NCBI GenBank assembly: GCA_024137785.1
Contig: JAHRHZ010000155.1
Span: forward strand, 832,537-896,536
Direction: 5' to 3'
Origin: Ginglymostoma cirratum
Taxonomy: Eukaryota
DNA length: 64,000 bases
Part shown: positions 3,023 to 56,135 of the stretch, in pieces
Layout: each line of letters begins with the position of its first letter
How positions within the stretch are numbered: position 1 is the first letter of the stretch
The notes under the pieces: model-generated
Seen by the model: only the letters and a program-made list of their open reading frames with translations
Database searches by the model: none
Told to the model about the DNA's origin: nothing
Made by a program: the position numbers and the translations under genes

Positions 3023-3304
3023 ACTCACCACGGAATCTCTTGATCACTTCTGTTCATGTGATTGAAGATTCATCAATCAATATAACTGAGGGGAATTCTG
3101 CAAGGATAGTCTGCTCAGTCGAGAGCTTCCCAGCTTCTAACCTGACGTGGAGACATCTTAATGTCACAATGAACAGAACAAGTTCCAACAATGAGCTGTG
3201 TTTGGAGATTCCTCACATTACATACAGGGAGTCAGGAGACTATCAGTGTGTGGCAGAGAATGAACATGGAGCAATGAATGGCTCCATAACCATCACTGTG
3301 AAAT
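3023..3304 (+). CDS. Gene A C2-set Ig exon (282 nt)
   Basis: ttgtag|ACTCACCA..GTGAAAT|gtaagt; IVC..W..GDYQC Ig motif; about 79% aa identity by hand count to gene B exon 31299-31580. Confidence 0.95.
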
Positions 3305-9300: not shown

Positions 9301-12300
9301 TGCATATGTATGTAGTACATAAATATTACATCCATAAGCTTTCCTGTATAGATTTTACACATGTGGACAGATATCACTTCACCAGTTTAGCATGAGAACA
9401 TCTACTTCTGAACACAACATTCTAAAATGGTACCGGAGTCATTCATACAATCGTACAGTGCTGTTGCTCTAGAAGGGGTGCAAAGGCAATTCACCAAGAT
9501 GTTGCCTGGGATGGAGCATTTCAGCAATGAAGAGAGGCTGGATAAGCTCAGGTTGTTTTCTTTGGAGCAGAGAAGGTTGAGGGAGAAACCTGATCAAGGT
9601 AATGTTTTGGGGGTGCATGGATAGAATGAATGGAAAGCAGCTGTTCCCTTAGTTGAAGGATAAATACCAGAGGGGCAACATTTTTAAGATGACAGGCAAG
9701 CAGATTAGACGGGATTTGAGGAAAACTTTTTTTCACCCAGGGGTTGGCGGGGCTCTAACCTGGAAGAGTAGTTGAGGTTGAAAGCCTCACAACCTTTATG
9801 ACATATGACATTATGAACCCATAATTCAAAGGAATAGGCCTTGTGTACTTAAATAGTACGAGAGCAGGTAGCAGTATAGCGTTGATGGACCGAACGGCCT
9901 CTACTGTATGATTTCTTGATTCTATGAGAGCCCATCAAGTTTGTAACACCAAAACTGCACTACATCTAAATTCTTTGGCTGTTTTTCCAGTTCAAGATTT
10001 CAGTGGATGGAAAGCAGGATTGCTTGGAGCTGGAATCATTTTAAGTGTTGGACTGAGTGGATTCTTCATCTTCAAGTGTGTGAGAAAGTAAGTGCAGAAG
10101 GTTCATTTGCTGCTTTTGAACTTGCAGCAGCTCTACAGCACCTTTGACAGTTCGAAAACACTTCAGAGGCACTGAATTGCCTTGACGTTCAGTCACTCCT
10201 TAATAATCCATCAAAGAGCGCAGTTCTACCTCAGCAGTGCAACCAACGGTGTCAGTCTGGATGTAAAACGTGCTTTGATCTCCTCAGGTTGTGAAACGGG
10301 TTGTTTCACTGCAGGCCAGGAATACTGGAGAAATTGGTCTGGAGAATACTGGTCTGGCTGCAGCTGTGGAGAGGGAAACAGAGTTAACATTGAGAGTCCA
10401 ATCTGAATCATTCACAGATTTTTCCAAATACTATTCTGAACCTGATGAAGACACATGTTGGACTTGAAACCTTAACTCTGTCTCTCTATACGGATGCTGC
10501 CTGCTGTCTGCTGCCCATCCTGCTGAGTTTCTCCAGCATGTTCTGTTTTTGTCTCAGGTCTCAAGCATCAGCAGCATTTTGCTTTGATATAAATGCAAAC
10601 CTCTCTGTCATCAGTGGATGCACCCCTTTCCATTTTCACCATCTCATTTCCCCTCTCTGGTTTCTCTATCTCATTCTCCCCCTCATTCTCTTACACATTG
10701 TCCAGTTTCTCACCGTTTTAAAGAGCAAAGAGTAACATCTGGACCTGCAGAAGTTCCCTCTTCACCCTCTGGAGGGAGCAGTGATCTAAAATTCAAAGTT
10801 ACACTGCAATATTGTCAGGAAACAGGAAACAAAGAGTTAATGATTTACCATTAATGAAAGATAAAGGTCCTGTGTTTCAGAAAAAAAGTGCTTTCACACT
10901 GTTGATAACAAGGTGTAGAGCTGGATGAACACAGCAGGCCAAGCAGCATCAGAGGAGCAGGAAGGCTGACGTTTTGGGCCAAGACCCTTCTTCAGAAATT
11001 ATTCAATTAAATTATTCAACGATCCCCTTCCCCTCCCCCATTTCTGAAGAAGGGCCTAGGCCCGAAACGTCAGCCTTCCTGCTCCTCTGATCCTGCTTGG
11101 CCTGCTGTGTTCATCCAGCTCTACACCTTGTTATTTCAGATTCTCCAGCATCTGCAGTTCCTACTATCTCTGCTTTCACACTGTTATCCACTTTCTCATC
11201 TGACCGATGGTGAATGTTTCTAATTCAATACACAGAGCAAAAAGCACAGGAAGAGGTCAAACAGCATGTGTCAGTAGACACACTCCAGGCGAGCAGTGGG
11301 ACAGGTCCAGGGTAAGTAACATAATTATTGGAATTTAATTCCGCAACCAACATCTTCCTTTGTTAATGCTGTGACTTTATAAAGGCAGATTCCAATGATC
11401 GATGCCATTAAAATATATATACTTAGTATTAAGACCTGGTTGTAAGGCTCAAGTCTGCTGTACAGAACATCTTTTAATCAAATTTTGTGGCTGGGTTGCA
11501 CAAGCTAAGCTAAGCTTGAGCTCCCTAGAGACTAGAACATTAAAGGAGCTGAGCAAAATGATTAAGATAATGAAAGGATTACTTTATAGTACAGAAGTTA
11601 ATTGTTGCTCAAAGGATACAAAATAAAACTACGCAGCATGATAATGACTTCCCGATCATCTGTTTCTTGTGAACACACATTAAAAGGCCTATGCCCACTA
11701 TCTTGAGCAGTGCCCAGTCTAATTCAGGATACTCTGGAAGGGAAAGATGACTCAAAACAAAAGTATCTCACGCTGCTACTCTGCTGAAAACCCACGAGTG
11801 GTTTACTCCACTAAAAAGATCTGGAGTCAAGTCAAAAAGATGTTTTGCCTACGATGCTGTCCGGCAGGTTAGTGATGCAGAATGATGCTAACATCACTGG
11901 CTGAGAGTGCCACGATTGTCCTACCTTTGCAACTTTGCCCCGGTCTAAGCTGTGGTCAACCCTCTGCTTAAACTCATTACAAGTCATCTCTCTCTCTGCA
12001 TTGCCTCAAGCAATGATTGTTTTTCATGAAATATTAAAGGCATTTATTAGATAATCCAAACCCCATTTTGAGTAGACAAAATAGATTCCAACAAACATTT
12101 CACCTTTTTCTTCGAGAAAAAAGGCTCATGGAGACTGCAAATCCCTGCTGTATTTCCCTGGCAACACAACCTGATTAATCACAACCTGCCTGTCGGCTCT
12201 GATAACTCAGATTGACAGTTAACTGTTCCTGTTGCAATTCCATGTCAATACGTTTTAGAGATAATTGTTCCTGCTGCATTTTAATGTCACTAAGATCGAT

Positions 12301-13380
12301 AGTTAGCTGTTCCTTCTGCATTTCTGTGTCCATGAAATTGACAGTTAACTCTTTCTGTTACATTTCCATGTCAATAAGATTTACAGTTAACTGTTCTGCT
12401 GGAATTCCAAGCCAATGATGGTCCAAAGAATCAGCACTGTCATTTCCTGATGGAGATATGGGTACCTCTTTGTCCACAGCTATTTCCTTGCCCTCATCCT
12501 AATGATTGGAGAACTAAAAACTTTGATTTCACATCTCCTGTTAGGAATGGTTCAAGGACTTGATAGAGATAGAGAAAGGCAATTACTTCTGATGGACTGA
12601 CATGGGAGAATGGGGGGCATTTCATGCCAAGAGGGACAGGGAAAGCAGATCCTTAAAATCACAGCCAGATGACTCAGGATTGATGTCAGGAAACACTTCT
12701 TCAAAAAAAAGCAGTTCGATAATGTGGAACTTTCTCCAACAATAATCAGAGCATATCCAAATCCTGTTCATTCTCACAGTGTCCAATCTGTTTCCAATAC
12801 AGGAGAGAAGGGACGTGAAACAAGAAACTAAAACCAAACGTTGTGCCAATGATTATGAAGGTCCTGCTTATGAAAACTGTGATATGAATTGGGCTTTGAG
12901 AAACCAGAAGGTGAGCTACATACAACAGGATATCCAGGCACTCACCTCCTCCACTGGTTCTAATACTGATGTCCCTGGTCCTTTCATGTCTCTGAAATCA
13001 TTTACACAACCAAACTTGAACCCAGGAAATTGGACAACCCACATCACTCAGTATCAATCATCAAACTTCACAGTTCAGTATCAATAATCAAACCCCACAC
13101 TGTTCAGTATCGATAATCAAACCTCATACTGTTCAGCATTGATAATCAAATCCCACATTGTTCAAATAATTAATGGATCTGTTGTGGGTATAATTTGTAT
13201 TGGTGTATTAGTATTTAACAATACTAAATGCTGATCACTCTGAATGTCTCTGTGCTTTTGTTTCTATTGCAGAAGAAATTTGAGGAAATGAAATCGAATC
13301 ATAATGTTCATGTACACCAAGAAGACAATATCTATGCAAACTGTAACTCTGATGAGGAGGCTGTGTATGGGAATATTTAA
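3023..13380 (+). CDS. Gene A: Siglec/CD22-like Ig-superfamily type I membrane receptor, 3' portion; join(3023-3304,9991-10087,11236-11311,12803-12910,13273-13380)
   Basis: All introns GT-AG; phases 1,2,0,0 give one frame ending at TAA 13378-13380; Ig and TM exons are paralogous to gene B; 5' exons lie upstream of the window. Confidence 0.85.
3485..3770 (+). mobile_element. CR1 LINE 3' end
   Basis: ORF RGEKFKGDMRGKFFTKRVVGAWNALP; ends in a short tandem tail TTCTTTGTTCTTTGTTCT. Confidence 0.85.
3830..5815 (-). mobile_element. Two degraded CR1 LINE fragments (~3830-5100 and ~5115-5815)
   Basis: Minus-strand ORF remnants LYRTLVRPHLECC..LERIQKRFTRM and RRMRGNLIEMY. Confidence 0.75.
5821..8420 (-). 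mobile_element. CR1 LINE ORF2 (endonuclease + RT), frameshifted and 5'-truncated
   Basis: APE motif MGDFNFPNIDW (8047-8382), NYRPVSLTSVVGK..QHGF (7031-7378), GVSQGSVLGP..KFADE (6186-6863), 3' end at ~5821. Confidence 0.95.
9460..9925 (+). mobile_element. CR1 LINE 3' fragment
   Basis: ALEGVQRQFTKMLPGMEHFSNEERLDKLRLFSLEQRRLR. Confidence 0.8.
9991..10087 (+). CDS. Gene A transmembrane exon
   Basis: tttttccag|..|gtaagt; FQDFSGWKAGLLGAGIILSVGLSGFFIFKCVRK; same 97-nt length and phases as the gene B TM exon. Confidence 0.9.
10904..11170. mobile_element. Penelope-derived fold-back mini-element with 15-bp TSD
   Basis: Arms ~10904-10998 and ~11041-11134 are inverted repeats; TGCTTTCACACTGTT flanks it at 10889-10903 and 11171-11185. 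Confidence 0.9.
11044..11071 (+). ncRNA. Minimal hammerhead ribozyme core (PLE type)
   Basis: CTGAAGA-A-GGGC(CTAG)GCCC-GAAA-CGTC: conserved CUGANGA and GAAA boxes, stem II, palindromic ACGU stem III, GUC site; stem I is weak. Confidence 0.65.
11236..11311 (+). CDS. Gene A cytoplasmic exon 1
   Basis: tacacag|..AGG|gtaagt; phase 2 to 0 bridges the TM exon and 12803; AKSTGRGQTACVSRHTPGEQWDRSR. Confidence 0.7.
12210..12410. repeat. 42-bp tandem repeat, ~5 degenerate copies
   Basis: Unit like GATTGACAGTTAACTGTTCCTGTTGCAATTCCATGTCAATAA; 14-aa periodicity in ORF 12212-12418. Confidence 0.8.
12803..12910 (+). CDS. Gene A cytoplasmic exon 2
   Basis: aatacag|GAG..AAG|gtgagc; ERRDVKQETKTKRCANDYEGPAYENCDMNWALRNQK. 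Confidence 0.8.
13049..13165. repeat. ~29-bp tandem repeat, ~4 copies
   Basis: CAGTATCAATAATCAAACCCCACACTGTT-like units. Confidence 0.85.
13273..13380 (+). CDS. Gene A terminal coding exon
   Basis: tttctattgcag|AAG; KKFEEMKSNHNVHVHQEDNIYANCNSDEEAVYGNI*. Confidence 0.85.
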   Translation, partial: KKFEEMKSNHNVHVHQEDNIYANCNSDEEAVYGNI

Positions 13381-14339
13381 ACTAAGCAAGATTGAGAAAC
13401 ACTCAGTGTGGGGACAACACCGATTGACGGAATCTTTCAAACTCAAATTTACCTTCCAAAAATCCACAGGAATCATCCCCAAGAGCTAATTTGAAATTTC
13501 TTGATATCATGTGCTGTAGTTTCTTGAAGGTGAAGTTGTCTCAGAGTTGAGTGATGATGTGTCCAAGATGTTTCTGTCTGGATTTAATTTTAAACATCCT
13601 TCTCCAACAGTGTCTCCAACAGCAAGGGACATTCTTCTCTCCATTGTGATTGTATACATCTTTTGATCTTGATCAAACATCTACCAGGACTCGACACACA
13701 CATTCAATCCCATGCTGGTTCACTCCCTCCCACTCATCCAAACGGGTCAATGTTTTCTGAATACTCCCCTCTCCAGAACTCTCATTTCTCCCTATTTTCT
13801 CTCCTATCGCCTCTCATGCCCTCTGTGAGCTCACCCTGTCTGTGACAGCCATCTCCTTTTCCTATGATCCAGTTCCCACTAAACCGTTGATCATGCAACA
13901 TCCCCTCCTGGCTCTCATGTCAGCCAACAGTGTGATGGTCTCTCTCTTCAGGAACCGGGCCTCTCTCTTTTACGTCTCCCACCTACACACTTCCCTTCCA
14001 AAAATAACCATTCACCTCCTTAAACCTCCCACTTCTCTCTACTGTTTTAAACTGCNNNNNNNNNNTGCAATAAAGGCAGATTTACATTTCTTTAACACCT
14101 TGGACCACTGCAGGACATCCCAAAGTGCTTCAGTGAATGAAATTGTTTTGAAGTACAGCCACCTGTACAATGTAGGATTGACACAGCAAGATCCCACAAA
14201 ATGTCATGTAATTGTGACCCACACAGTTTGGTTTCATTGATGCTGATTGGGAATAAATATTGGCTGCAGCACATTGAGGAGGTGGACCCCGTTCCTTTTC
14301 CAAATACCAGAATGGATTTCTATATCCACCTGAACAGCA

Positions 14340-14590: not shown

Positions 14591-14619
14591 GAAGTGCAGC
14601 AATCCTTTAGTACTGGGGA

Positions 14620-15990: not shown

Positions 15991-16083
15991 CATGCTCCTC
16001 TGATGCTGCTTGGCCTGCTGTGTTCATCCAGCTCTACATCTTGTTATCTCAGATTCTCCAGGATCTGCAGTTCCTACTATCTC
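15991..16083 (+). mobile_element. Penelope-terminus fragment with 8-bp TSD
   Basis: Same arm sequence as ~11080-11170; TAAGACCA at 15983-15990 and 16084-16091. Confidence 0.8.
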
Positions 16084-25521: not shown

Positions 25522-25743
25522 CTAGAACCTGATCTGAGCGTATTCTGTGTCCTTGTCCCTGTGCACAGTCTCATCACCGCTGGGTACCTTAAGAAAGTTG
25601 ATGTTGGCTTGGAGAAGGTCTTTAGTTCTGTCTTGGTGTCCAGCGTCTCTGCCCATTGCACCATCAAAGACATCCTGGGGACCTGACGTCTCTCCCTCTC
25701 TAGTTGTGTCCTGAAGATCAGTAACCACCATGTTCCGTGAACC
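25522..25743 (-). CDS. Gene B terminal exon (ITSM-like TEYAQI)
   Basis: tttccatttctccacag|GGT; GSRNMVV..DLLQANINFLKVPSGDETVHRDKDTEYAQIRF*. Confidence 0.9.
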   Translation of the reverse strand, partial: GSRNMVVTDLQDTTREGETSGPQDVFDGAMGRDAGHQDRTKDLLQANINFLKVPSGDETVHRDKDTEYAQIRF

Positions 25744-40700: not shown

Positions 40701-43700
40701 ATTCTCAGATTGCTGTTGTACACAGCAAATGGATTCAACTGAAAAAAAATACTGAGAACGGATAAATCTACCATTCTCTGTGCGCTGCTTGTTAAATAGT
40801 TTCTAGGTACTCCGGAGGTTATATTGCTCCAACATGGAGTGAGAGCTGGTAATGGATGAACATGTATATGTGTGTGTACATCTGAGAGATGTTGAAGTCT
40901 GTGTGCACTCACATTCCAAAGTGATGGTTATAGAGCCCTCCACTGCTCCATGTGCATTCTCTGCCACACACTGATAGTCTCCAGTCTCACTGTATGTAAC
41001 GTGAGGAATCTCCAACCAAAGCTCGTTGTTGGAACTTGTTTCGTTCATTGTGGCATTAAGATATCTCCACATCAGGTTAGAAGCTGGGAAGCTCTCAACA
41101 GAGCAGATTATCACTGCAGAATTCCCCTCATTTATATTGATTGATGAATCTTTAATTATATGAGGAGAAGTAATTGAGAGATTCCGTGGTGCATCTGAAA
41201 GCAAAGGAAGAGAATATTGTGACAGAACAGTGCACAGCAAGATGCTGGTTTTTCTGTATTTGGTGGTTCTGAATTTTCATTCACTTTCCTGCTATGTAAG
41301 TTTCTATGTGATACTTCTAATGGATATTGCATATGTAAGCTGTCATTATATTCTCTCACCACCAGAGCTGCTATCCATCGGGAAAGAAAAAAAGTTATTT
41401 TCATGTCCTCAATATGACTCCAGGTTCTTGTCAGCTATTGGATAATATTTATTCATTGCATTACTGAGTGATATGGTATGACTCCAGACCAGATCAGGCC
41501 AAAATCTGTCTGCTGGCCAGTATGTTCATTTTAGCAAGTAGACAGCATTTGATTTGTCAGATACTTAGTAAGAGAATAAATCCATCAGATGCAATAGTTT
41601 TGAATAAACAGAAATAAGATTTCTGATGCAAAAGTACCGTCTCCAATGTATGTGCCACATATATTCTAACATCCAGAATTAAACTGAGGTCAATATGGGT
41701 AACAGATAAACTGTGATTGAAGACACTCCAGAGCACATTAAATGAAAAATGAGGTGAAGACAGATCCCTCAAATCTTTGAGCAGTACCCCAGATATTAAT
41801 GACGCTGTGGTTCATCATATCTCAGTGTTAAATATGGAAGTGGAATTTCTTTCTGACATACTAGTGGCTTTATTCTGAAACCTAAGTGAATCCCAGGCTT
41901 TTTTCTGAATCCTTATTTCAACATTTAGCAACTGGCTCCCTGGACTACTCTTGGGTCCTAACATAGCTGCAACAACAAGTTCCCAGGTCTAACGGAATGG
42001 GATGATCAAATGGCGGCTGGTACCTCTTCATGTGCTGTTACCAAATACAACAAGTGACCTTCAGTTAGCTTTTCAGCATCTGTGTGAGCAAACCTGAGCC
42101 TACACAGAGCTTGTCGACCCAATTTAGCCACAACCTCTGGCTGTTCTCACTCACCCAGAAGGATTATCCTATGAAATCCCTGACCCTGGCTGCAGAGAGC
42201 AACACGCTATCTTAGAGTGACATTGTCAAAAATCATACGATATCAGGTTATAGTCCAACAGGTTTATTTGAAAACACAAGCTTTCGGAGTCTCTGTCCTT
42301 CCTCCATCATCAGACACAAAATTTATATGCAAAAAATGAAAGCATCATTGAATTGATATGAATGTATTGAACAAACCTAAGATGGCTGTTAAATCTTTAA
42401 TCGGTTAGAAAGAAGATGCAGGTTTCTATTGATAAATATGCAAATCCAAGAATTTCTTTCAAGTCACTGCCCTGAGATAACTAAAGGTTTTATCAGTATA
42501 CCAGAGAAGACATCTCAGGTCACGCAATGCATGTTAGATGTGAGGCCTTGTTTAGAATCTGTCTGTGTTTTAGCTTGGAGTCAGAGCTGACAGCTGCAGA
42601 AATATCTATCTGTTCCTAAACTAAAAAAATCCCCACTCGGTACTGCACTTCCACTCTTCCCTCACCTCTCCTGTATAGCTGGGCCACCCATAGTATCTCG
42701 GCCTTGTGTGCTGCTGCGCTTCTCCAGAGATCCATCACCAACACCCAGACAGAAAACCAGCTGCTGTGTGGGACCAGGGAGAACTCCTGCACTACCTGCC
42801 TGTTTCTCTTGGACTGCCAGGTATTCACACATTCCCTATCTGCCTGCTTCCCCCTGACATGTGGTATAATTATGTGAAGGGTTCAGACCCCAAACGTCAA
42901 CTTTCTTACTCCTCTGATACTGCCTGGCCTTGTGTGTTCCTCCACCTCCACACTGACTGTCTTGTTGGGACTGTTTCAGGGGACTGTTAAGAATCAACCA
43001 TGTTGCTGTGGGACTAGAGTAACAAGAAGGACTGTCCCAATAAGAACAGCAGATTTCCTTCTGTAAAGGTCATTAGTCATCCTGAGGGCTTTGTACAAAA
43101 ATTGACAGTGGTTGCATGGCCACTAGATTTTTATTCCACATTTTTGCCATCTGCCACAGGGTTGAACCTGTGTCTCCCAAAGCGTGAGCCAGGATGTCTG
43201 GATTATTAGACCAGTGATATTACTTGTACACCACCATCTCTCCTGCTTCAGTAAGGAGACCACAACTGCACACAGTGGCCCAGATATGTTCAGGGCCCTA
43301 AACAGTTGTAGAAAAACACCTCCCAAACTTTTATTCCCGAATCACATTGCAAAAACTACCGACATCCTACTTGTATTCCAAAGCACCTGCTGCACCTGCT
43401 ACGGATATCTATTTGTAATACACGTACCAGGAATCATTTGAGAGAGCATTAGAAGTTCTGAATGACACAATATTAAATTACAGGGTGTTTAGAGCATTCT
43501 AAAGGTCTGAAAAGATGTGAAATTGCTCACATTCTACGGGAGTTTGGACAGGGAGAAACTGAGATGCCCAAGCTGTTTGTTACTACACAGTAGTAGGAGA
43601 TTTCCACCTCAAATTCATAAATAACAGTAATGGTTTGACCAGATAACATCAGATCAATGACTTTTGGTCTCATTCTGACAGATGTATTGCGGAGAGCATC

Positions 43701-46700
43701 TTTCAAATGGAAAACTATCAACGCATTAAACACTGAGATAAAGGAAAGAGTGTTGATGGAATATTCCCCACTTGACTGTATGAGTGCGGCTCCAACAACA
43801 CTCAAGCAGCTCAACACAATCCAGGACAAAGCACCCTACTTGATTGACACAACATCCACAAATATCCAATAACTCCATAACTGATGCTCAGTAGTAGCAG
43901 TGTGTACCATCGACAAGATGCACTTCAGAACTTCACCAAGGCTACTGAATCAGCACTTCCCAAACCCACAAGCATTTCCATCTAGAAGTACAAGGGCAGC
44001 AGGTATGTGGAAACACTGTCCCATGGAACCCCACCTCTCGCAAGTTGCCCTCCAAGTCACACACTATCCCAACTTGGAAATATATCACCATCCCTTCAGT
44101 ATTGCCTGTTTCAAAATCCTAGGACTGCCTCCCTTAATTGTGGTACGTACAGCACATGGACTGCAGTAATTCAAGAAGACAGCTCAACACCACCTTCTCA
44201 AGGGGTAATTGAGGACAGGCAGTAAATGCTGGTCCAGCCAGTGACATCCACATTATGTGAATGACTACACATAGGAGTGATGTTTAATCACAGGATTTGG
44301 ATAGGAATTTAACTTGAATACAGGTCCAAGTTTAGTATTCAATAAACTGCGCTGGTCCCTGTATTGCAGATGCTTTAACACAGCATTACAATAAGATTAC
44401 AATGGAGGAATGTATCTCTGCTCTGTGCCAGTGTTTCAGAAGTTCAAAACCTTCTCTCACCCCTCCTAATGTTCCTCCCATCATTATTTCCATCCATTCC
44501 TTTATCCCACATATCCAGCCACCACCACCTGCTTCAATATATTGACACGATTCACCTTGACCACTTACATTCTATCCTCCCTACTTTCTGTGGAAGTGAG
44601 GCCCACATTCCTGCCACTGTCTGTGAGAATGAGTCCCATATTCTCCTTGCTACTCCTTGTGAGAATGAGTCCCACATTCTCTTAACCACTCCCCATGGGA
44701 GTGAGAGCTCTATTTCTCCCACTCATGTGGATATAAGTCCCACATCCTCCCCAAAAACTCCCAGTGGGTGTGTGTCCAACATACCACTCCCCATTCCCGT
44801 GGGAGTAAGTCCCACATTCCCCACCCACTCCCTGTCAGATAAGTGTTACATACACTCCCTGTGGATGCATGTCCCACATTCCACCCCGCTCCCTGTGGAA
44901 GTGTGTCCTATATCCTCTTCCAGTGTCTGAGAGGAGGTGGGGGAGGATTTTCTCTTGAATTCCCCACAAGAACTGTTTTCTATTGATGGCCCTTTACTTA
45001 TCTCCTCACTCCTGGACAAGTTATGTCTCCTCGATCAAAACCCCTTTCAGAATTTTACAAACCTTGGTAAGGTCACCCTTCAGCCTCTCTGTCCTGAAGT
45101 AACATCACTGGACCAAAAAAAAAAGCTCTGTTTCTCTCTCCACAGATACTACCAGACCTGCTGGGTTTCTCCAGCATTCTGTGTTTCCATTTCACCCTCA
45201 GTCTTTTCTGGGGAAAGAAGTTCCAGCCTGTTTATTTTAGTTTTGGCAGATAGTTATAACCTCTCAGTTCTGGGATCATCCTTTGTCAATACTAATTGAA
45301 CCCAGTTCAAAGTGTCATTTCATATAAGACTGCATGCTGTTCAATTTTAATGTTTTTGATGATGGAATCATCACTGAATGAGCCCAGTAATATATTCCGT
45401 TCTCTTGCTGATCCTTGGGAATGTGAAGAGGAGTCACTTTCTGGAATACAACTGAGTGTCTCACTGCATCTGTTTTAGAGTCAACCACATTGCTATGGAT
45501 CAGAGGCACATGCAGGCCAGGCTGGGTAAGGACAGCATTTACTTCCCTAAAGGGCATTAATGAACCCGATGGGTTTTACAACAATCGACAATAGTTGCAT
45601 GATCGCTAGCTTTTGATTCTATATTCTTATGGAATTCAAATGTCACCTTCTGTCATGGTGGGTTTGAACCTGTCCCCCACAGAGCATGAGCCAAGGGTCT
45701 GGATTATTATAACAGTGACATTTCCAGTACGCCACCAACTCTCCTACTTCAGTAAGGAGACCAAAACTACTCACAGTGCTCCGCAATTGTGTTCAGGGCA
45801 CTACACAGCAGTAAAAAAAAAAACTCCTGACCTTTTATACATGATTCACATTGCAACAGCCATCAACATCCCACTTGTATTCCAAAGCACTTGCTGCACC
45901 TGCACGCAGTCTTTTAGGATTCATTTGAGAAAACATATGAATGACAGAATAAGAAAATACAGACATGTGGATCATACTGAAGCTTCAAGAAGATGTGAAA
46001 TTGTTTTAAAACTAGGATTAAAAGTACTCACATTCTATGGAAACTTGGACAGGGAAAGACTGTGAGCTGCCCAGGCTGTTTGTTGCTACACAGTAGTCGG
46101 AAATATCCACCTCAAGTCCATAAGGAACAGGTTTGGTTTGACCAGATAATGTCAGATCAGTGACCTTCCCTTGGGAGATCTTAAACCAGCTGAATCTGTG
46201 GACTGCTGGATTCCCATCACTGGAACAACTTAGAGAAACGGTCTTTCCTTTTCCTGTTGTCATTCTGACAGACGTATTGCAGGGAGAATCTTGCAAATGC
46301 AAAATTATTAATTCATTAAACACTGAGCTAAAGGAAGGAGTGTGATGGAATACTCCCCACTTGCATGGATAGGTGTACTTCCAACAATACTCAAAAAGCT
46401 CAACACTATTCAGGACAAAGCAGCCTGCTCAATTGGCACCACATCCAAAGACATCTACCCTGTCCACCATCGACCGTCTGTAGCAGCAAGTATTTACTAT
46501 CTACAAGATGTACTGCAGAACTTGGAACCATAGAATTCCTATGCTGTGGAAACAGCCTATTTGGTCCATCGATCCCACACCAACCCTCCGAAGAGCATCC
46601 CACCCAGACTCATTCCTGCTCTGTAAACCTGCATTTCCAATGGTTAATCCACATGGCCTGCACATCCCTGGACAATTTGGGCGATTTATCATGGCCAATG

Positions 46701-49700
46701 CACTTAACCTGCAAGTCTTTGGACTAGGTCAAAAGTCACACGACATCAGGTTATGGTCCAACAGGTTTGTTTGAAATCACAAACTTTTGTAGCACTGCTG
46801 CTTCATTAGGTGAAGTGAAGAAAAGTGCACAGGCATAGAATTTATAGGCAGAGAGATCAGTGGGTGGAGAGATCAAAAGATCATACTAAATGGTGTGAGT
46901 GGAGTGTCGAATAATAATAAGTCTCTGCAGGTGATCAAAAGTGTCAGACAGTGTGAGTCAAGTATCAACAGCTGAATCATAAGTGAAGGGGATGATCTAC
47001 CTCATACACTGCAGGCAAGGTATATTGGTGAGACTTTGCAGATGCTACGGCAATGGATGAATGGATACAGTGCAACAATTGCCAGAGAGAAATGTTCCCT
47101 CCCAGTTTAGCAGTCTAGGAGATACACAACAATGTAGAATTGCTGAGCAGAAACTGATAGCCACATTCTGTATCCATGTTGATGGCCTCAACCATGATCT
47201 CAGGTTCATGTTATGCTACATATAACCCCACTATACTGATCTATATTTGTAAAACCTTCCTTTTTGTCTTGTTTTGACAGCATCACCTTGATAACTTATT
47301 ATGATCTCCCTACCTTAATTAGTTTGTATGGTTTTGGATTACTTATTACTTTAGTTAGACCGTCGGCATGTGACTCTTATACCTATCATGTTATTCCAGC
47401 CATTTGGTTTGTCTCCAGCACCACTTTATTTTTAATTTTTTTTGTAAATATCTCTCTGCCTCAATTAATTGGACTTTTGATCATCCCCTTCACTTACTAT
47501 TCAGCAGTTGACACTTTCCTCACATTGTCTGACACTTTTGATCACCTGCAGAGATTTATTATTGGACACTCCACTCACACCATCTGTATGATCTTTTGAT
47601 CTGTCTGCATATTGATCTCTCTGCCTATAAATTCTGTGCCTATGTGCTTTTCTTCACTTCACCTGCTGAAGGGGCAACACTCAGAAAGCTTGTGATTTCA
47701 AATAAACCTGCTTGTTTATAACCTGGCGTGGTGTGACTTCTGACCTTGTCCACCCCTGTCCAACACAGTGCGAACCACGGGTCACCGTGTCACTCAAGGC
47801 TTCTTAGGCAGAACCTTCCAAAATCTCAACCGTTCCACCTGGAAGGACAAGGGCAACAGATACATGGGAACAGCATCACCTACATGTTCTCCAAGTTACT
47901 CGCCATTCTGTCTTGGCAATATATTACCATTCCTTCAGGGGCGCTGGTGTCAAAATCCTGGAATTCCCTCCCTAAGGGCTTTGTGGGTCCATCTCCAGCG
48001 TGAGGACTGCAGCGGTTCAAGATGGTGGCTCAGCGCCACCTTCTGAAGGGGCAATTAGGGACAGGGAATAAATGCTGGTCCAGCCAGCGACATGCATATT
48101 CAGTAAATGACTATACGTAAGTGTGATATTTAACAGCCGGATTTGGATAGGAATTGAATATACTCACAAGTTGTAGACACTCCATGTTTAACCTGTGCTG
48201 GTTCCTGACTCCCAAATTACTTTACACAGAATTACAACGAGACTACACCACAGGAGCGCCCCCTCTACTCTGTACCAGTGTTCCTGTTTCACACCAGCTC
48301 CTCGTATCTCTCGCCACCTCGTGTGCTTCTCCAGCTTCCCCTACTGCAACATATCAACACGATTGACTTTGACCATTTCCTGTGGGAGCAAGTCCCACAT
48401 TCCCCCCACTCCTTGTGCAGTGAGTCCCACATTCTCAAGCCACTATCTAGGGGGAAGATGTTTCTCCTGAATTACCCCATTGGATTTATTTGGGACTGTC
48501 TGCTATCGATGGCCCTTGTTCTGGTCTCCCCCTCTCCCCACAAGTGAAAACATCTTGTCTATGTCTCCTCGAACAAAATCCTTTTCAGAATTTTAAAGGT
48601 CATCCCCTCAGCTTCTGCTTTTCAAGAAAAAAGAGCCTCAGACTGTTCAGTCTCTCCCAACGGCTGTAACCTCTCACTTCTGGGGTCATCCTTTGTAAAT
48701 CCTTTTCCAATACCTGATTCAATGCAAGATCGACACCATCTCAGTCACAGGCAGCAATAACTTACACTTCACACTCAAGGTGACCGAGTTGAACACTCGG
48801 TGGTTGGTTTGAGGGTAGTCACAAGTACAGCGGACAGTTTGATGGTGATGTATGTGTGAAGGGTTAAAGGTCAGCACTGTAAAAACCTCGCCCTCGCTCT
48901 CTGTGGTGTCACTGACTGAGGAAGACGGCAGCTCGCTCCAGGTCAGTTTGGGAGGGTTATCAGGGCAGGTGTGGAGAGCTTTACAGATGATATAAGCTGA
49001 CGTCCCTTCCCGTAAATCCCTCGGAAGTAACAACTCGGGACGGTCAGGAATATCTGTAAAATGAAAATAGCCAGATGTTAACATTCATTGTACGTGTATT
49101 TGGGTTGATTCTATAGTTTTGCATTGGAACCTGGACTCTTAAAAACTCAAGGGCAGTCAGCCCATCCAATCCATGCCGGCTCAAGCAATCCTGATCACTT
49201 CCCATCATTCTGTGAATTTATTTCCCTCAATTGTCTATCCAGTTTCCCTTTGGAATCATTGATCAAAACATCTTCTACCCCACCTTGCAGACAGCGAGTT
49301 CCAGATCACAACTGCTCTTAGAAACATAGAAAACAGGAGCAGTTTTGGGCCATTCAGCCCTTCAAACCTGCCCCATAATTCAGTATGATCATGGCTGATC
49401 ATGCAGTGATGTGGCAGAAGTGGGAACCAGTATAATAGGCACTTATTAGACTCATCTACCAACTTGTCAATAACGCAGCACTCCCTCAGCACTGACCCTC
49501 CAACAGTACAGTACTTCCTGAGTACTGATCCTCTGATAGTGTGGCACTATCTCAGCACTGACTCTCTGACAGTGCGGCACTCCCTCATCACTGCCCCCCC
49601 CTCCCCCCCAACAGTGTGGCACTCCCTCAGTACTGACCCTCCAACAGTGCAGCACTCTGGGATCACACCCATTTGAAGTTGATGTTCATGTTGATACCTC

Positions 49701-52700
49701 CTGCAGTAAGACCTGAACTCACAACTTTCAGCCTGAGAGGTATGGCCCGTATCCCCTTGGACTGATGGACTGTCAGATGTTCTGGGACTTACCTAGAACC
49801 TTTAGATGGGCTGGTTCTTTGAAGGTGTGAACTTCGAATCCTTCCACATCCACATACAAATAATAGTTGTCACTGTCTTCAGGCCTGAGGTTGTTAATTT
49901 TCAAGGAGCAGTCCTTCTGCTCCAAGTCTCCAATTATATCTGTACGTCCAACAAAGGTGGACATCCCATAATTGGGGTCTTTGCTGTAGACGACGGCGTA
50001 TTTCCAGTAATACCAGTATTTAAACCAAGCTCCCTGCACGGCCTTGTAAGGGTGCGACGGAAAGTCAAAGGTACAGGGTATAACCACACATGAACCACTG
50101 ATAGCCTTCCGAGCTGCAGTTGTCATTGTCCATTCTTCTGTCGCCACGCCTGAGTGAGAGACAAGGAGGTACCGGACATTACGGAACTAATTATGATTGT
50201 ATTTGGAAACAGAATACAGGGCAGTCTGGTTGACTGCTTACATGGATAACAGCACATAGTGCGAGTGAACATCTGAATCTGGAGCAGTAGTAGGCCATTC
50301 AGCCCCTTGATCCTGTTCCGCCATTCAATAAGGTCATGTCTGATCTGTTTGTGTTTAGAATTCTACATTCCCATCTCTCCCCAATATCCGTTGATTTCTT
50401 GGCCAATCAAAAATCTATCCCCCTCCCCGGCTTTAAAAATATTCACTGTTCCCATTTTCACTGCCTTATGAGGCAGAGTCCCAAAGTCACACACGCTCTG
50501 TTTTCAAAAGGTGACCTGTAATTTTAACATAGAGTCAGCTGGTTTTGGACTTGCCCACAAGACGATATGTCATTGCCTCTTCCATTTTAAGAAGACCCTT
50601 CAGAGTTTTGTAAAGTGACAATCTTTTGAGCTACTTTTTTCAGATTTAATTGGCTAAATTAAAGCAGATGAAAGTTTGTCAACCCTGCAAGAGACACTTA
50701 AAAAAAAATTCAAAACTGAAATGAATAAAATGCAATGCAGTATTGTTTCTTTTGAGATGAAGAAGGCACTCCTACCCCAGCAGTGACCACCATGCACTGA
50801 CAGTGTGCAGTAAGGCTGTGGACCCTGTCTTTACATACATGATGAGAAGGCAAACATAATATTGTATTTTGTTGAGTAATTGATGGAGGATAATCATCTT
50901 GTGACAGTTGTGCAGGGTACTGGTTGCTGCACACCTCAATTACTTGTTTGGTCCTGTTATTTAAGGACAGATATCTTCAAACCAATCTGCTCGGGCATGC
51001 TATGATCCACCACTGGAGCAGGTTCACTGGGACATGAACCTGTGCATCCTGGCTCAGAGGTGGGGACACTACCACTGTGTCACAAGAGCCAACTGATGCT
51101 TATGACAGGCACTGAGACATGGTTGAGCAGGTTGGAAGGGTCAGTGCTGAGGGAGCACCGCTCTGTCAGAGGGTCAGTGCTGAGGGAGCACCGCTCTGTC
51201 AGAGGGTCAGTGCTGAGGCAGCGCCGCTCTGTTGGAGGGTCAGTGCTGAGGGAGCACCGCTCTTTCGGAGGATCATTGCTGAGGGAGTGGGCACTGACTG
51301 AGAGTCAGTTCTGAGGGAGCGCTGCACTGTCAGAGGGTCAGTGCTGAGGTACTGGGCAATGTCGGAGGGTCAGTCCTCAGGGAGCGCCGCACTGTCGGAC
51401 AGTCAGTGCTGCGGTAGCACTGCTCCGTCGTAGGGTCAGTGCTGAGGGAGTGGGCACTGTCGGAGAGTCAGTTCTGAGGGACCGCCGCACTGTTGCAGGG
51501 TCAGTGCTGATGGAGTGCCGCTCTGTTGGAGGGCTAGTGCAGAGGCAGCGACACTCTGTCGGAGGGTCAGTGCTGAGGGAGCGCCACTCTTTCGAATAGT
51601 CAGTGCTGAGGGATCGCCGCACTGTCAGAATGTCAGTGCTGAGGCAGCGCCGTTCTGTTGGAGGGTCAGTGTTGAGGGAGTGCCACTCTGTCGGAGGGTC
51701 AGTGCTGAGGGAGTGCCACTCTGTCAGAGGGTCAGTGCTGAGGGAGCGCCGCACAGTTGCAGGGTCAGTTGTTGGAGCTCCGCACTGTCGGACAGTCAGT
51801 GCTGAGGGAGTGCCGCTCTGTTGGAGGGTCAGTGCTGAGGAAGTGAAGCACAGTTGGTGGGTCAGTACTGAGTGAGCACTGCACCGTCAGAGGGTTATTG
51901 ATAAGAGACTGCAGCGCTATTGAACGGTCAGTGCTGAGTGAGCGCCACACTGTCAGAGAGTCAGTACTGACGGACTGTCGTACTTTCGGAGGGTCAGTAC
52001 CGAGGGACTGCCGCACTGTTGGAGGGTCCTTGACAAGGGAGTGCTACACTCTCAAAGGGTAAGTACGAAGGAATACTGGAATGTCGAAATGTCAGCACTG
52101 AGGGAGTACCACACTGTCAGAGGGTCTTTGCTGACAGAGTGCCATACTGTCCGTGGGTCACTACTGAGAGAGTGCTGTATTGTTGGCGGGTCAGTACTGA
52201 GGGAGTGCTGCATCATCAGAGGATCAGGACGAAGGGAGTGCTGCACTGTCGGAGGGTCCAATGCTGAGCGAGTGCCACTCTGTCGGAGGGTCAGTAGTGA
52301 GGGAGTGCTGCACTGTCAGAGGTCAATACTGAGGGACTGCCACACTGTCGCAATGCTGCGTTCTCAGAGGGTAAGTACTGAGGGAGTGCTGCAATGTTGG
52401 AGGGTCAGTACTGAAGGCAGTGCTGCATTGTTGGAGGGTCATTACTGAAGGCAGTGCTGCACTGTTGGAGGGTCGTTACTGAAGTAGTGCTGCACTGTTG
52501 GAGGGTCAGTACTGAGAGAGTGCTGCCCTACTGGTAGGTCAATGCTGAGGGAGGGATGCATTGTCAGAGCATCAGTACTGAGGGAGTTGCCCATTGTCAG
52601 AGGGTCAGCGCTGACGAAGTGCTGCACTGTTGGAGGGTCAGTACTGACAGTGTGCTATTCTACCAATTGGTCAGTACTAAGGAAGGGCTGCACTGTTAGA

Positions 52701-55700: not shown

Positions 55701-56135
55701 GCTATCAGAGTCCTGGTGTCAAGATCTACATCACCATCCAGTTTTTATCCAGACTTCTGAAATGTCCCTGTCATCCCACACTCACTGACCTACCTTAGTA
55801 CCATGTCTGTCAACACCTTGGTTTTATGATTCTCCAAAACCCTCCACGCTCCCTCTCTCTACCTATGTAATCTCCACCAACTTTTGAACCCTCCAAGATC
55901 TCTTTGCTCCTCCAGTGCTGTTATCAGACTGGGAGCCAGTATATGTCAGTGAGCACAGGGTTGTTGGGTGAACTGGACATGGTACGAGTTTGTACTCTGG
56001 CTCACTGCTGAATTAGTTCCTAATCATAGCTCAATAAAAATGATCTTTTGAAAAACTATTAACCATAAATCTGTCCGAGCTGACAATGACATTACCTTGA
56101 AGAAGTAATAGCAGGAAGTAAGATTTCTCAATCAT
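25522..56135 (-). CDS. Gene B: complete Siglec/CD22-like receptor, 915 aa (SP + V + 7 C2 + TM + ITIM/ITSM tail); complement(join(25522-25743,27181-27262,27562-27658,30100-30375,31299-31580,36491-36772,39429-39710,40913-41194,46032-46289,48766-49053,49793-50149,56096-56135))
   Basis: 12 exons, all GT-AG; phase-1 introns between Ig exons; total 2748 nt = 916 codons with no internal stop; Siglec cysteine pattern in domains 1-2. Confidence 0.9.
27001..27110 (-). pseudogene. Relic copy of the 3' half of gene B terminal exon
   Basis: Translates DVLYTNNNFSKPPSSNGTVHRDKD versus the live DLLQANINFLKVPSGDETVHRDKD; then frameshifts. Confidence 0.8.
27181..27262 (-). CDS. Gene B cytoplasmic exon 1 (ITIM LTYSQV)
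   Basis: gttattgcag|G..CAG|gtacag; RKTATEETASKTNEIGLTYSQVSVKHQ. Confidence 0.9.
27562..27658 (-). CDS. Gene B transmembrane exon
   Basis: tttttatag|..|gtaagt; WIDSNKWKVGLVMAGIMLNVFLAGILIFLCVRK. Confidence 0.92.
30100..30375 (-). CDS. Gene B Ig domain 8 (C2-set)
   Basis: YSPRETTV..VTLTCSS..YTWFR..DDAGFYCTATNPLG; ttccag| and |gtaagc. Confidence 0.93.
31299..31580 (-). CDS. Gene B Ig domain 7 (C2-set, 282-nt repeat exon)
   Basis: tttttag| and |gtgaga; IIC..W..GDYQC. Confidence 0.93.
31755..32220 (+). repeat. Degenerate 33-bp minisatellite array
   Basis: CAGTACTGA..GTGCAGCACT-type units. Confidence 0.75.
32431..32634. mobile_element. Penelope-derived fold-back mini-element with 15-bp TSD
   Basis: Inverted arms; TTGATCAAAAACAAG at 32416-32430 and 32635-32649; hammerhead core 32545-32572 (+). 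Confidence 0.9.
33913..34157. mobile_element. Second-family Penelope-derived fold-back mini-element with 11-bp TSD
   Basis: Inverted arms meet at ~34050; TCTACTTTCAA at 33902-33912 and 34158-34168; hammerhead-like cores ~34021-34047 (-) and ~34058-34090 (+). Confidence 0.85.
35950..36055 (-). pseudogene. Truncated pseudo-exon of the 282-nt C2 repeat
   Basis: SNNELWSQTPHIISRETGDYQCLAANEHGVMEGFI; 5' half and acceptor deleted, donor region altered. Confidence 0.85.
36491..36772 (-). CDS. Gene B Ig domain 6 (C2-set, 282-nt repeat exon)
   Basis: cttttag| and |gtgagt; intact frame. Confidence 0.93.
37873..38187 (+). mobile_element. HE1-type SINE inserted into a CR1 remnant, TSD GAGTTAT
   Basis: Full head, core and tail; GAGTTAT at 37863-37869 and 38188-38194. 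Confidence 0.92.
39429..39710 (-). CDS. Gene B Ig domain 5 (C2-set, 282-nt repeat exon)
   Basis: ttttcag| and |gtgagt; intact frame. Confidence 0.93.
40913..41194 (-). CDS. Gene B Ig domain 4 (C2-set, 282-nt repeat exon)
   Basis: ctttcag| and |gtgagt; intact frame. Confidence 0.93.
43531..43699 (-). pseudogene. Pseudo-exon duplicate of gene B domain 3
   Basis: Splice sites kept, but an internal deletion removes the B/C strands (first Cys and Trp) and there is a 2-nt deletion near the end; 169 nt is not a multiple of 3. Confidence 0.88.
44560..44930. repeat. ~36-38-bp degenerate minisatellite
   Basis: GAGTCCCACATTCTCC..ACTCCCTGTG units. Confidence 0.8.
46032..46289 (-). CDS. Gene B Ig domain 3 (C2-set)
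   Basis: tttgcaag| and |gtgagt; VSLSCSSDGNPAVHRFSWFK..DYCVATNSLG. Confidence 0.88.
46725..47765. mobile_element. Penelope-like remnant with large inverted arms (~46725-46980 vs ~47500-47750)
   Basis: GGTCAAAAGTCACACGACATCAGGTTAT..TTTGAAATCACAA and its reverse complement at ~47690-47745; internal GIY-YIG-like remnant (YIGETLQML). Confidence 0.7.
48766..49053 (-). CDS. Gene B Ig domain 2 (Siglec-type C2-set)
   Basis: ttttacag| and |gtaagt; IICKALHTCPDNPPKLTW..VLTFNPS..HHQTVRC is a typical Siglec domain 2. Confidence 0.95.
49470..49660 (-). repeat. 33-bp minisatellite array
   Basis: Same unit family as 51135-53330. Confidence 0.85.
49793..50149 (-). CDS. Gene B Ig domain 1 (Siglec-type V-set)
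   Basis: ctcactcag| and |gtaagt; GSCVVIPCTF..W..GRT..GD..KDCSLKI..L..EDSDNYYLYV. Confidence 0.96.
51135..53330 (+). repeat. Long 33-bp minisatellite array (~2.2 kb, about 65 units)
   Basis: Unit GAGGGTCAGT(G/A)CTGAGGGAGTGC(C/T)GCACTGTC(A/G); 11-aa periodic ORFs (GSVLRECxTVx). Confidence 0.95.
53660..53840 (+). mobile_element. Penelope 3' terminus fragment
   Basis: Reverse complement of ~23734-23915; degenerate hammerhead core at ~53758-53784. Confidence 0.8.
56096..56135 (-). CDS. Gene B signal-peptide exon (coding part; exon acceptor at 56163)
   Basis: ACAATGA Kozak context; MIEKSYFLLLLLQ(G)|gtaatg is phase 1 and joins VATEEW. Confidence 0.85.

What the first reader, a model, noticed from the sequence alone, without database searches (positions are those of the whole stretch)
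3023..56135. Convergent pair of Siglec-like receptors with shared ectodomain modules but different tails: candidate shark paired-receptor system
Seen: genes A (+) and B (-) face tail-to-tail, with stop codons about 12 kb apart. They share the 282-nt C2 exon (~79% aa identity to B domain 7 by hand count) and a 97-nt TM exon with the same phases (WK.G...AGI.L.V.L.G..IF.CVRK), but their cytoplasmic exons look unrelated. B has an ITIM plus an ITSM-like motif; A has YxN motifs. Established: paired activating/inhibitory receptors such as SIGLEC5/14 and SIGLEC11/16 share ectodomains through gene conversion, but their activating member uses a charged TM residue and DAP12. Inference: A may be a counter-signalling partner that signals directly through its own tail.
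Basis: partly seen in the sequence, partly recalled or inferred. Interest (0 to 1): 0.8.

Follow-up and report, generated by a model that had tools for sequence, protein, structure and literature searches.

The report
Two neighbouring shark Siglec genes, unpaired
The window holds one complete inhibitory-type Siglec receptor gene and the tail end of a neighbouring Siglec gene with a different, conserved YxN signalling tail. Both are real members of a large shark and ray Siglec family, but they almost certainly have unrelated ligand-binding tips, so they are not a matched receptor pair.

Summary
Gene B (- strand, ATG 56135, stop 25522) is an intact 13-exon, 1013-aa model. It has a Siglec V domain that lacks the sialic-acid Arg, eight C2 domains, a TM segment, an ITIM (LTYSQV) and an ITSM (TEYAQI). 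Gene A (+ strand) lies only partly in the window: one 282-nt stalk C2 exon, a homologous 97-nt TM exon and three cytoplasmic exons, with its stop at 13378-13380. RNA contigs from two runs show A's three tail introns spliced out.

A's tail has YEGP, YENC, YANC and a C-terminal YGNI. The two stop codons are 12.1 kb apart. The N gap (14056-14065) lies 676 nt past A's stop and touches no exon.

The paired-receptor reading of A and B is not supported. A's whale-shark orthologue (88-97% identical per exon) has a canonical Arg-containing V domain that is only 27% identical to B's V. A's C2 exon is 90% identical to its orthologue but 74-79% to B's repeats, so there has been no recent gene conversion.

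The family mixes V lineages with three tail classes: ITIM/ITSM, charged TM with a short tail, and YxN. The YxN tail is conserved across shark orders, and its signalling direction is unknown. Other windows of this genome had already been noted as carrying Siglec-like clusters.

The parts
3023..3304 (+). Gene A, last Ig exon (R-type C2/I-set stalk domain, 282 nt, phase 1-1)
   Evidence: AG/GT borders. Pfam Ig_3/I-set. Best solved-structure match is MAG domain 3, 5e-17. 90% identical to residues 336-428 of whale-shark P0246.
9991..10087 (+). Gene A, TM exon (97 nt)
   Evidence: Motif found and borders. RNA contigs start exactly at 9991, and the joint 10087>11236 is seen in runs X1 and X2. 97% identical to P0246.
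11236..11311 (+). Gene A, cytoplasmic exon 1 (76 nt)
   Evidence: Spliced joints 10087>11236 and 11310>12802 (cut +1) in contigs of X1 and X2. 88% identical to P0246.
12803..12910 (+). Gene A, cytoplasmic exon 2 (108 nt; YEGP and YENC); a cassette missing from several homologues
   Evidence: Joints. 89% identical to P0246. Alignment.
13273..13380 (+). Gene A, last coding exon (YANC, then 7 residues, then YGNI at the C-terminus), stop at 13378-13380; the 3' UTR continues past 13900
   Evidence: Joint 12908>13271 (cut +2), with the contig continuing to at least 13900. 91% identical to P0246. Conserved across shark orders.
14056..14065 (.). Assembly gap (10 N), downstream of A's stop and outside all exons
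   Evidence: Letters not looked up.
56096..56135 (-). Gene B, leader exon (MIEKSYFLLLLLQ + 1 nt)
   Evidence: 12 of 14 residues match the leader of P0167. Same leader in orthologues P0155 and P0160.
49793..50149 (-). Gene B, Siglec-type V-set exon, with Tyr in place of the essential Arg (NYYLYVD)
   Evidence: Pfam V-set and Ig_CD22. PDB matches: MAG 7e-15, sialoadhesin 3e-14, Siglec-5 and CD33. 96% identical to whale-shark P0155.
48766..49053 (-). Gene B, domain 2 (Siglec-type first C2)
   Evidence: Best PDB matches are domain 2 of Siglec-10, MAG, Siglec-8, CD33 and CD22. Borders.
46032..46289 (-). Gene B, domain 3 (C2)
43531..43699 (-). Truncated, frame-breaking copy of the domain-3 exon (pseudo-exon, 169 nt)
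   Evidence: Including it gives a stop at aa 385.
40913..41194 (-). Gene B, R1 (282-nt stalk repeat)
39429..39710 (-). Gene B, R2
   Evidence: 94% identical to P0155.
36491..36772 (-). Gene B, R3 (no 1:1 counterpart in the whale-shark model)
31299..31580 (-).
   Evidence: 97% identical to P0155.
30100..30375 (-). Gene B, domain 8 (C2)
29158..29451 (-). Gene B, domain 9 (membrane-proximal C2, ...NSNPPGHLTW...)
27562..27658 (-). Gene B, TM exon (97 nt)
27181..27262 (-). Gene B, cytoplasmic exon 1 (82 nt, ITIM LTYSQV)
   Evidence: LTYSQL is conserved in P0155 and P0160.
25522..25743 (-). Gene B, terminal coding exon (LLQANINF, then ITSM TEYAQI, then stop)
   Evidence: Colinear with P0160 residues 655-743.

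Best explanation
The window shows two convergently transcribed neighbours from a large, modular Siglec gene cluster of an orectolobiform shark close to the whale shark and zebra shark.

Gene B is a complete inhibitory-type Siglec: leader, Arg-less Siglec V domain, two C2 domains, four tandem 282-nt stalk repeats, two further C2 domains, TM, and a tail with one ITIM and one ITSM. By analogy with other ITIM/ITSM receptors, it would recruit SHP-1/SHP-2-type phosphatases after tyrosine phosphorylation. That step is inferred.

Gene A is present only as its 3' end. By orthology it is a four-Ig Siglec: Arg-containing V, C2, two stalk repeats. Its TM exon is homologous to B's, but its tail is a separate, ancient module with YENC, YANC and a C-terminal YGN[IVL]. 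That tail most likely docks SH2 proteins of the Grb2 type, or a tandem-SH2 protein. This too is inferred.

A and B share the stalk and TM modules through common descent and exon shuffling within the family, not through ongoing gene conversion. Their ligand-binding V domains belong to different lineages, so they are neighbours and not a matched inhibitory/activating pair.
For: - B: 13 exons, all AG/GT, 1013 codons, no internal stop. Its V and domain 2 match Siglec V and domain 2 in solved structures. It is 92-97% identical per exon to whale-shark and zebra-shark orthologues.
- A: three tail introns are removed in transcript contigs of two runs from different studies, and weak poly(A) read cover lies over the 3' UTR. 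The ORF is intact.
- A's exons are 88-97% identical to whale-shark P0246, in which the matching stalk domain runs straight into the TM.
- P0246's V carries the Arg (SYHFRIEF) and is 27% identical to B's V.
- On a V-domain tree, P0246 falls in a well-supported clade of five YxN-tailed orectolobiform proteins inside the Arg-containing lineage. B falls in a separate well-supported Arg-less clade.
- A's C2 exon is 74-79% identical to R1-R4 but 90% to its orthologue, and the TM exons are 55% identical.
- Tail class changes at least 20 times on the V tree.
Against: - A's V exon lies outside the window and was not read in this genome. Its type rests on orthology, in a family where modules are demonstrably reshuffled.
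- No binding or signalling data exist for any member.
- Zebra-shark P0098 shows that a B-type V can sit on a YxN tail, so a partner for B may exist elsewhere in the cluster.
Confidence: 0.8

Rival explanations
1. One reading: A and B are a paired-receptor system with the same ligand specificity. B inhibits, and A delivers the opposing signal directly through its YxN tail.
For: - The genes are adjacent and tail to tail, with a shared stalk exon type and a shared TM exon.
- The tail classes differ.
- In the family, B-type V domains do occur with YxN tails (P0098, P0159, P0156).
Against: - All five orthologues or close relatives of A's tail lineage carry an Arg-containing V that is 27-32% identical to B's.
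- The shared exons are only 74-79% (C2) and 55% (TM) identical, and each is much closer to its cross-species orthologue.
- A lacks B's two membrane-proximal domains.
Confidence: 0.06
2. The A-type tail is an activating, ITAM-like module: two tyrosines at a fixed distance of 11 residues, YANC then 7 residues then YGN[IVL]. It would bind a tandem-SH2 kinase of the Syk type. Its true inhibitory partners would be Arg-containing, ITIM-tailed genes elsewhere in the cluster, not B.
For: - The Y-to-Y spacing is invariant across shark orders, and the second motif is YxxI/V/L.
- ITIM-tailed relatives with V domains 65-66% identical to that of A's orthologue exist in whale shark and zebra shark (P0166, P0012).
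- Tail switches on closely related V domains are frequent.
Against: - The first motif has Cys, Trp or Tyr at +3, not Leu or Ile.
- Classical charged-TM members already exist in the family.
- No experimental data exist.
Confidence: 0.25
3. The A-type tail is itself inhibitory or endocytic. It would be the Grb2 arm of a CD22-like tail without the classical ITIMs, or a degenerate ITIM tail. A and B would then both dampen signalling.
For: - The CD22 YENV motif binds Grb2 and accounts for most of CD22's calcium inhibition (PMC5302901, PMC6286995).
- In lamniform, carcharhiniform, hexanchiform and sawshark homologues the last motif is S-[VI]-Y-x-N-[VIL], which fits the ITIM consensus.
- In a stingray pair, the VYANV ending is a truncated version of a VYASL ITIM tail.
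- YGNI also fits the YxxΦ endocytic pattern. This last point is my own knowledge.
Against: - In gene A and the other orectolobiform copies the -2 residue is Ala, which is outside the ITIM consensus.
- No ITSM or second ITIM is present.
Confidence: 0.3

Closest known systems
SIGLEC5/SIGLEC14 and SIGLEC11/SIGLEC16 paired receptors (PMC6288428)
   Same: Neighbouring Siglec genes, one with an ITIM-type tail and one without. Some extracellular and TM modules are shared.
   Different: True pairs have highly homologous ligand-binding domains that are kept alike by repeated gene conversion, and the activating member uses a charged TM residue and DAP12. Here the inferred V domains are about 27% identical, the shared exons are 55-79% identical with no conversion signal, and A has a long tail with tyrosine motifs and no mid-TM charge.
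CD22 (Siglec-2)
   Same: A multi-Ig Siglec whose tail carries a Grb2-binding YENV motif. A has YENC. NCBI names several relatives of B 'CD22-like', and B's V reaches Pfam Ig_CD22.
   Different: CD22 combines the YxN motif with three ITIMs and has an Arg-containing V. A has YxN motifs only, and B has ITIM and ITSM only. B's V matches MAG and sialoadhesin better than CD22.
MAG (Siglec-4) and sialoadhesin (Siglec-1)
   Same: They are the best solved-structure matches to B's V (7e-15 and 3e-14). MAG domain 3 is the best match to the stalk repeat (5e-17).
   Different: Both keep the essential Arg, whereas B has Tyr at that position. The domain number and the tails also differ.
Predicted shark proteins: Rhincodon typus 'Siglec-13' (P0246) and 'LOW QUALITY PROTEIN: MAG-like' (P0155); Stegostoma tigrinum 'Siglec-10 isoform X2' (P0160)
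   Same: They are orthologues of A (88-97% per exon) and of B (92-97% per exon).
   Different: They are automatic annotations only, with inconsistent mammalian names. The whale-shark B model has three stalk repeats where this window has four.
Arg-less Siglecs such as human Siglec-XII (mentioned in PMC8615218)
   Same: A Siglec fold without the canonical sialic-acid Arg, combined with an inhibitory tail.
   Different: B's Arg-less V lineage is old. It is shared by orectolobiform and lamniform sharks and is not a recent loss.

Membership tests
Siglec family | N-terminal V-set Ig domain of the Siglec type | tested here: met
   B: the top PDB hits are all Siglecs (MAG, sialoadhesin, Siglec-5, CD33, Siglec-8/7/10) and Pfam gives V-set plus Ig_CD22. 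A: the V exon is not in the window; orthologue P0246 has one.
Siglec family | Three-Cys V domain (C-x4-C in strand B plus Cys in strand E, and no F-strand Cys) with an extra Cys in domain 2 for the interdomain disulfide | tested here: met
   Read directly from B's exons: SCVVIPC...DCSLKI, then IICKALHTC...PPKLTW in domain 2. The pattern itself is my own knowledge of the family.
Siglec family | Essential Arg on strand F that binds the sialic-acid carboxylate | tested here: not met
   B has NYYLYVD where MAG has KYYFRGD in the HMMER alignment, so B is Siglec-like by fold but not a proven sialic-acid lectin. A's orthologue has SYHFRIEF. A's own V was not read.
Siglec family | C2-set domains, a single TM, and a cytoplasmic tail with tyrosine motifs | tested here: met
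Paired activating/inhibitory receptors (SIGLEC5/14 type) | Highly homologous ligand-binding ectodomains | tested here: not met
   The only shared Ig exon is a stalk repeat at 74-79% aa identity. A lacks B's domains 8 and 9. The V of A's orthologue is 27% identical to B's V. This is indirect for A's V in this genome.
Paired activating/inhibitory receptors (SIGLEC5/14 type) | Concerted evolution by gene conversion between the two genes | tested here: not met
   A's C2 is 90% identical to its whale-shark orthologue versus 74-79% to B's repeats. B's R2 and R4 are 94-97% identical to their own orthologues. TM nt identity is 68-72%, and intron similarity is limited to about 125 nt next to the exon.
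Paired activating/inhibitory receptors (SIGLEC5/14 type) | Opposing signalling modules | tested here: inconclusive
   B has ITIM plus ITSM by sequence. The direction of signalling from A's YxN tail cannot be told from sequence.
Paired activating/inhibitory receptors (SIGLEC5/14 type) | Co-expression on the same cells | not tested
   Only A's tail region was laid on reads. B was not tested.
DAP12/FcRγ-coupled activating receptors | A basic residue inside the TM helix and a short tail | tested here: not met
   A's TM core, AGLLGAGIILSVGLSGFFIF, has no charge, and the tail is about 100 aa. Other family members do have ILGIRA... TMs with tails of 4-12 residues.
CD22 (Siglec-2) orthologue | Seven Ig domains, an Arg-containing V, and a tail with ITIMs plus a Grb2 motif | tested here: not met
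   B has nine Ig domains, no Arg and no YxN motif. A has YxN motifs but no ITIM, and its orthologue has four Ig domains.

The most novel reading that the evidence does not exclude
YxN-tailed Siglecs may form a third, ancient signalling class beside the ITIM and DAP12-coupled classes. The class is conserved across shark orders, and similar YxN-ended tails occur in rays, teleosts and lizards. It has repeatedly been re-paired by exon shuffling with the same V lineages as ITIM-tailed genes. In that reading it acts as a self-contained counter-receptor (Grb2-type or ITAM-like). Gene A would be one such receptor for sialic acid, and B's own YxN partner (the orthologue of zebra-shark P0098) would lie elsewhere in this cluster.
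Probability: 0.2. Interest if true: 0.65.

Novelty: new variant of a known kind. Interest (0 to 1): 0.38.

Why it matters
Siglec signalling is usually described as two classes: ITIM-bearing, and DAP12-coupled through a charged TM residue (PMC6288428). My full-text searches found no paper on elasmobranch Siglecs, while the databases hold dozens of automatically named models per species.

This locus shows three things about the shark family:
- It mixes at least two V lineages, one without the sialic-acid Arg.
- It has a stalk of variable length built from a 282-nt exon.
- It has three tail classes, one of them a conserved YxN tail of unknown signalling direction.

That gives comparative immunologists concrete constructs to test. 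The specific claim of an A-B pair would have been the most interesting part, and it does not hold.

Tried and rejected
- My first model of B's last exon was short, with the acceptor at ...cttaag|GTACCC. I replaced it with a 222-nt exon starting at 25743, after homologues showed a continuous alignment and a better acceptor.
- A hydrophobicity screen for B's leader missed the real one and offered 57416-57371.
- A word search restricted to the TM and tail of P0098 found only P0098 itself, because the tails are too divergent for exact words.
- I first took zebra-shark P0098, then bamboo-shark P0097 and P0167, for A's closest relatives. The third protein search turned up the true orthologue, P0246.
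- A tblastn search for relics of an Arg-containing V exon, or of domain 8/9 exons near gene A, found nothing in the window.
- The search of earlier findings does not accept places before the window, and its word searches gave nothing on A's 5' half.
- Searches used single exons or database proteins only, never a joined spliced model. One script joined the exons by coordinates solely to count codons and stops, and it printed no sequence.
Full report
**What is in the sequence**

The window is vertebrate DNA of 37-51% GC, with LINE remnants and two N runs, at 370-469 and 14056-14065.

On the minus strand there is a chain of Ig-domain exons. All have AG/GT borders and all are in phase 1-1:
- V: 50149-49793
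- domain 2: 49053-48766
- domain 3: 46289-46032
- four 282-nt repeats: R1 41194-40913, R2 39710-39429, R3 36772-36491, R4 31580-31299
- domain 8: 30375-30100
- domain 9: 29451-29158
- a 97-nt TM exon: 27658-27562

The remaining exons complete the gene:
- The tail has two exons. The first is 27262-27181, carrying LTYSQV. The second is a single 222-nt terminal exon, 25743-25522, carrying LLQANINF and then TEYAQIRF before the stop.

Counted by coordinates, the 13 exons give 1013 codons with no internal stop.

Only the 3' end of a second gene lies on the plus strand. It consists of a 282-nt Ig exon (3023-3304), a 97-nt TM exon (9991-10087) and three cytoplasmic exons.

**RNA evidence for gene A**

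Contigs of two runs from different studies (X1, X2) join 10087 to 11236, 11310 to 12802 and 12908 to 13271. All three skipped stretches have GT..AG ends.

- After adjusting for the ambiguous bases, the exons are 11236-11311, 12803-12910 and 13273-13380.
- The same contig runs on through the 3' UTR to beyond 13900.
- A poly(A) library (X12) gives thin cover over the 3' UTR, mostly with the first mate on the minus strand. In most stranded libraries that fits a plus-strand RNA.
- Contigs that begin exactly at 9991 carry about 60 further bases that do not lie on the laid stretch, as expected for an upstream exon.

The resulting tail is about 100 residues long with four tyrosines: YEGP, YENC, YANC and YGNI, the last at the C-terminus.

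**The assembly gap**

The gap at 14056-14065 is 676 nt past A's stop (13378-13380) and 11.5 kb from B's stop. No exon or reading frame crosses it.

It is equally 78.5% to R2, 77.4% to R1 and 74.2% to R3. Nucleotide identity is 86-88%, in the same range as the four repeats among themselves.
- The TM exons share length, phases and the quoted motif. They are 55% identical in protein and 68% in DNA.
- Neither blastn nor tblastn finds similarity between the tails.
- The stop codons are 12.1 kb apart.

**What the genes are**

B belongs with the Siglecs on several counts:
- B's V exon matches Siglecs first among solved structures: MAG 7e-15, sialoadhesin 3e-14, then Siglec-5, CD33, Siglec-8, -7 and -10. 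It also passes Pfam V-set and Ig_CD22.
- Domain 2 matches the second domain of Siglec-10, MAG, Siglec-8, CD33 and CD22.
- The Siglec cysteine pattern is present.

The essential Arg is replaced by Tyr: NYYLYVD against KYYFRGD of MAG in the alignment.

The stalk repeat matches MAG domain 3 best (5e-17), followed by generic I-set domains.

**Relatives**

I searched 1.8 billion representatives with A's Ig exon, and ran two word searches with full-length hits. These revealed a very large shark, ray and skate family. NCBI names its members MAG-like, CD22-like, sialoadhesin-like or Siglec-10/12/13.

- B's orthologues are whale-shark P0155 and zebra-shark P0160/P0169, at 92-97% per exon and 95-96% in V. 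The window therefore comes from an orectolobiform shark close to these two.
- The orthologues keep LTYSQL and T[ED]YAQI.
- The zebra-shark models also share LLQANINF, where paralogues have the ITIM LLYANINF.

**The decisive comparison**

A's five exons are 90, 97, 88, 89 and 91% identical to whale-shark P0246 ("Siglec-13", 557 aa), the same level as B against its orthologues.

P0246 consists of a leader, one V domain with the canonical Arg (SYHFRIEF), a first C2 domain, two stalk repeats running straight into the TM, and the YxN tail. This also confirms that exon 3023-3304 splices directly to the TM exon, and that A has no counterpart of B's domains 8 and 9.

- P0246's V is 27% identical to B's V.
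- On a tree of 108 first V domains, P0246 sits with zebra-shark P0275 and three hemiscylliid proteins, all YxN-tailed, in a well-supported clade inside the Arg-containing lineage.
- B sits in a separate well-supported clade of Arg-less V domains.

The caveat is that A's V was inferred from five related species and was not read in this genome.

There is also no sign of gene conversion. Every shared exon is much closer to its cross-species orthologue than to its counterpart in the neighbouring gene.

**What remains of the idea**

The family is modular.
- B-type V domains occur with ITIM/ITSM tails (B, P0155, P0160) and with YxN tails. Zebra-shark P0098 has a V 84% identical to B's, and other examples are P0159, P0168, P0170 and the lamniform P0156 and P0158.
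- Arg-containing V domains also occur with both tail types.
- Tail class changes at least 20 times on the V tree.

There is also a third class, with an Arg inside the TM (ILGIRA...) and a tail of 4-12 residues. This is the classical adaptor-coupled type. At least one bamboo-shark case has an ITIM-tailed sister with a closely related first V domain (P0003 and P0251).

The YxN tail is therefore not the family's substitute for DAP12 coupling. It is an additional class.

**The YxN tail**

- Its last exon is conserved in orectolobiform, lamniform, carcharhiniform, hexanchiform and sawshark proteins.
- The pattern is [ILV]-Y-[AE]-N-C, then seven residues, then Y-[GA]-N-[VIL] at the C-terminus. The distance between the two tyrosines is invariant.
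- The exon with YEGP and YENC is a cassette that is missing from several homologues.
- Similar YxN-ended tails turn up in rays, teleosts and lizards. I did not establish that those are homologous.

The signalling direction cannot be read from the sequence. Four observations bear on it:
- YxN is the Grb2 SH2 motif. In CD22 the YENV site binds Grb2 and carries most of the calcium inhibition (PMC5302901, PMC6286995).
- In most shark orders the last motif is S-x-Y-x-N-[VIL], which also fits the ITIM consensus. In gene A the -2 residue is Ala.
- In one stingray pair, a VYANV ending is a truncated form of a VYASL ITIM tail.
- The fixed 11-residue spacing recalls an ITAM, but the first motif has Cys at +3.

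The family-wide motif LLYANINF in B-type tails resembles [IL]YANC[ND]F in A-type tails. The two terminal exons may therefore share a distant origin. That is an inference.

**Verdict**

B is an inhibitory-type, Arg-less Siglec. A is the 3' end of a sialic-acid-type Siglec with a conserved YxN tail. They are neighbours in a modular cluster and not a matched pair.

Earlier notes of this scan place further Siglec-like genes 111 kb before and 152 kb after the window. That fits a large cluster, and B's real YxN partner, if it exists, should be sought there.

**Limits**

- B's transcription was not tested.

Noticed in passing
window 43531-43699 (-): A truncated 169-nt copy of B's domain-3 exon with intact AG/GT borders. 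It breaks the frame, and including it gives a stop at codon 385. It is probably a decaying duplicate exon.
   Followed up: partly
window 35935-36063 (-): An isolated copy of the 3' half of a 282-nt stalk-repeat exon, 84% nt identical to A's exon, lying just downstream of R3.
   Followed up: no
window 26984-27080 (-): Inside B's last intron lies a partial copy of the end of the terminal exon (…NNNFSKPPSSNGTVHRDKD…). A 1-nt deletion destroys the TEYAQI motif and gives an early stop. It is either a relic or a possible alternative 3' exon, and no RNA test was done.
   Followed up: partly
window 3199-3201 (+): A's stalk exon reads ELCLEI. R1-R4 (ELWLEI/EVWLEI) and nearly all homologous stalk domains seen have Trp at this position (whale-shark orthologue: ELWLDI). 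The codon is TGT where TGG would give Trp. This leaves an unpaired Cys in the stalk, or it may be an allele or an error.
   Followed up: no
window 56096-56135 (-) versus 49793-50149 (-): B's leader peptide is the type used by the Arg-containing V lineage: 12 of 14 residues match P0167. Other genes with a B-type V (P0098, P0159) use a different leader. B therefore looks like an exon-shuffled chimera of two lineages.
   Followed up: partly
window 25600-25625 (-): B and its zebra-shark orthologue read LLQANINF where paralogues have the ITIM LLYANINF. That tyrosine was lost before the two species split, while the ITIM LTYSQ[VL] in cytoplasmic exon 1 is kept.
   Followed up: partly
window 10828-11250: A fold-back repeat in A's first tail intron attracts very deep RNA cover (about 1,500 reads deep in the poly(A) run), with many variants and strand-switch joints. 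It is a highly transcribed dispersed element. The same element occurs at 262-601, 32429-32634, 42876-42953 and 53735-53842.
   Followed up: no
window 5900-8400 (-): A broken LINE (endonuclease and reverse-transcriptase pieces) lies antisense in A's 6.7-kb intron between the Ig exon and the TM exon.
   Followed up: partly
proteins P0003, P0017, P0245, P0314, P0325 (other sharks): These family members have an Arg inside the TM (ILGIRA...) and tails of 4-12 residues, the classical adaptor-coupled activating type. P0003's first V domain is closely related to that of ITIM-tailed P0251 in the same species.
   Followed up: partly
window 36491-36772 (-): R3 has no 1:1 counterpart in the whale-shark model, which has three repeats. 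The number of stalk repeats therefore differs between close species or between gene models.
   Followed up: no
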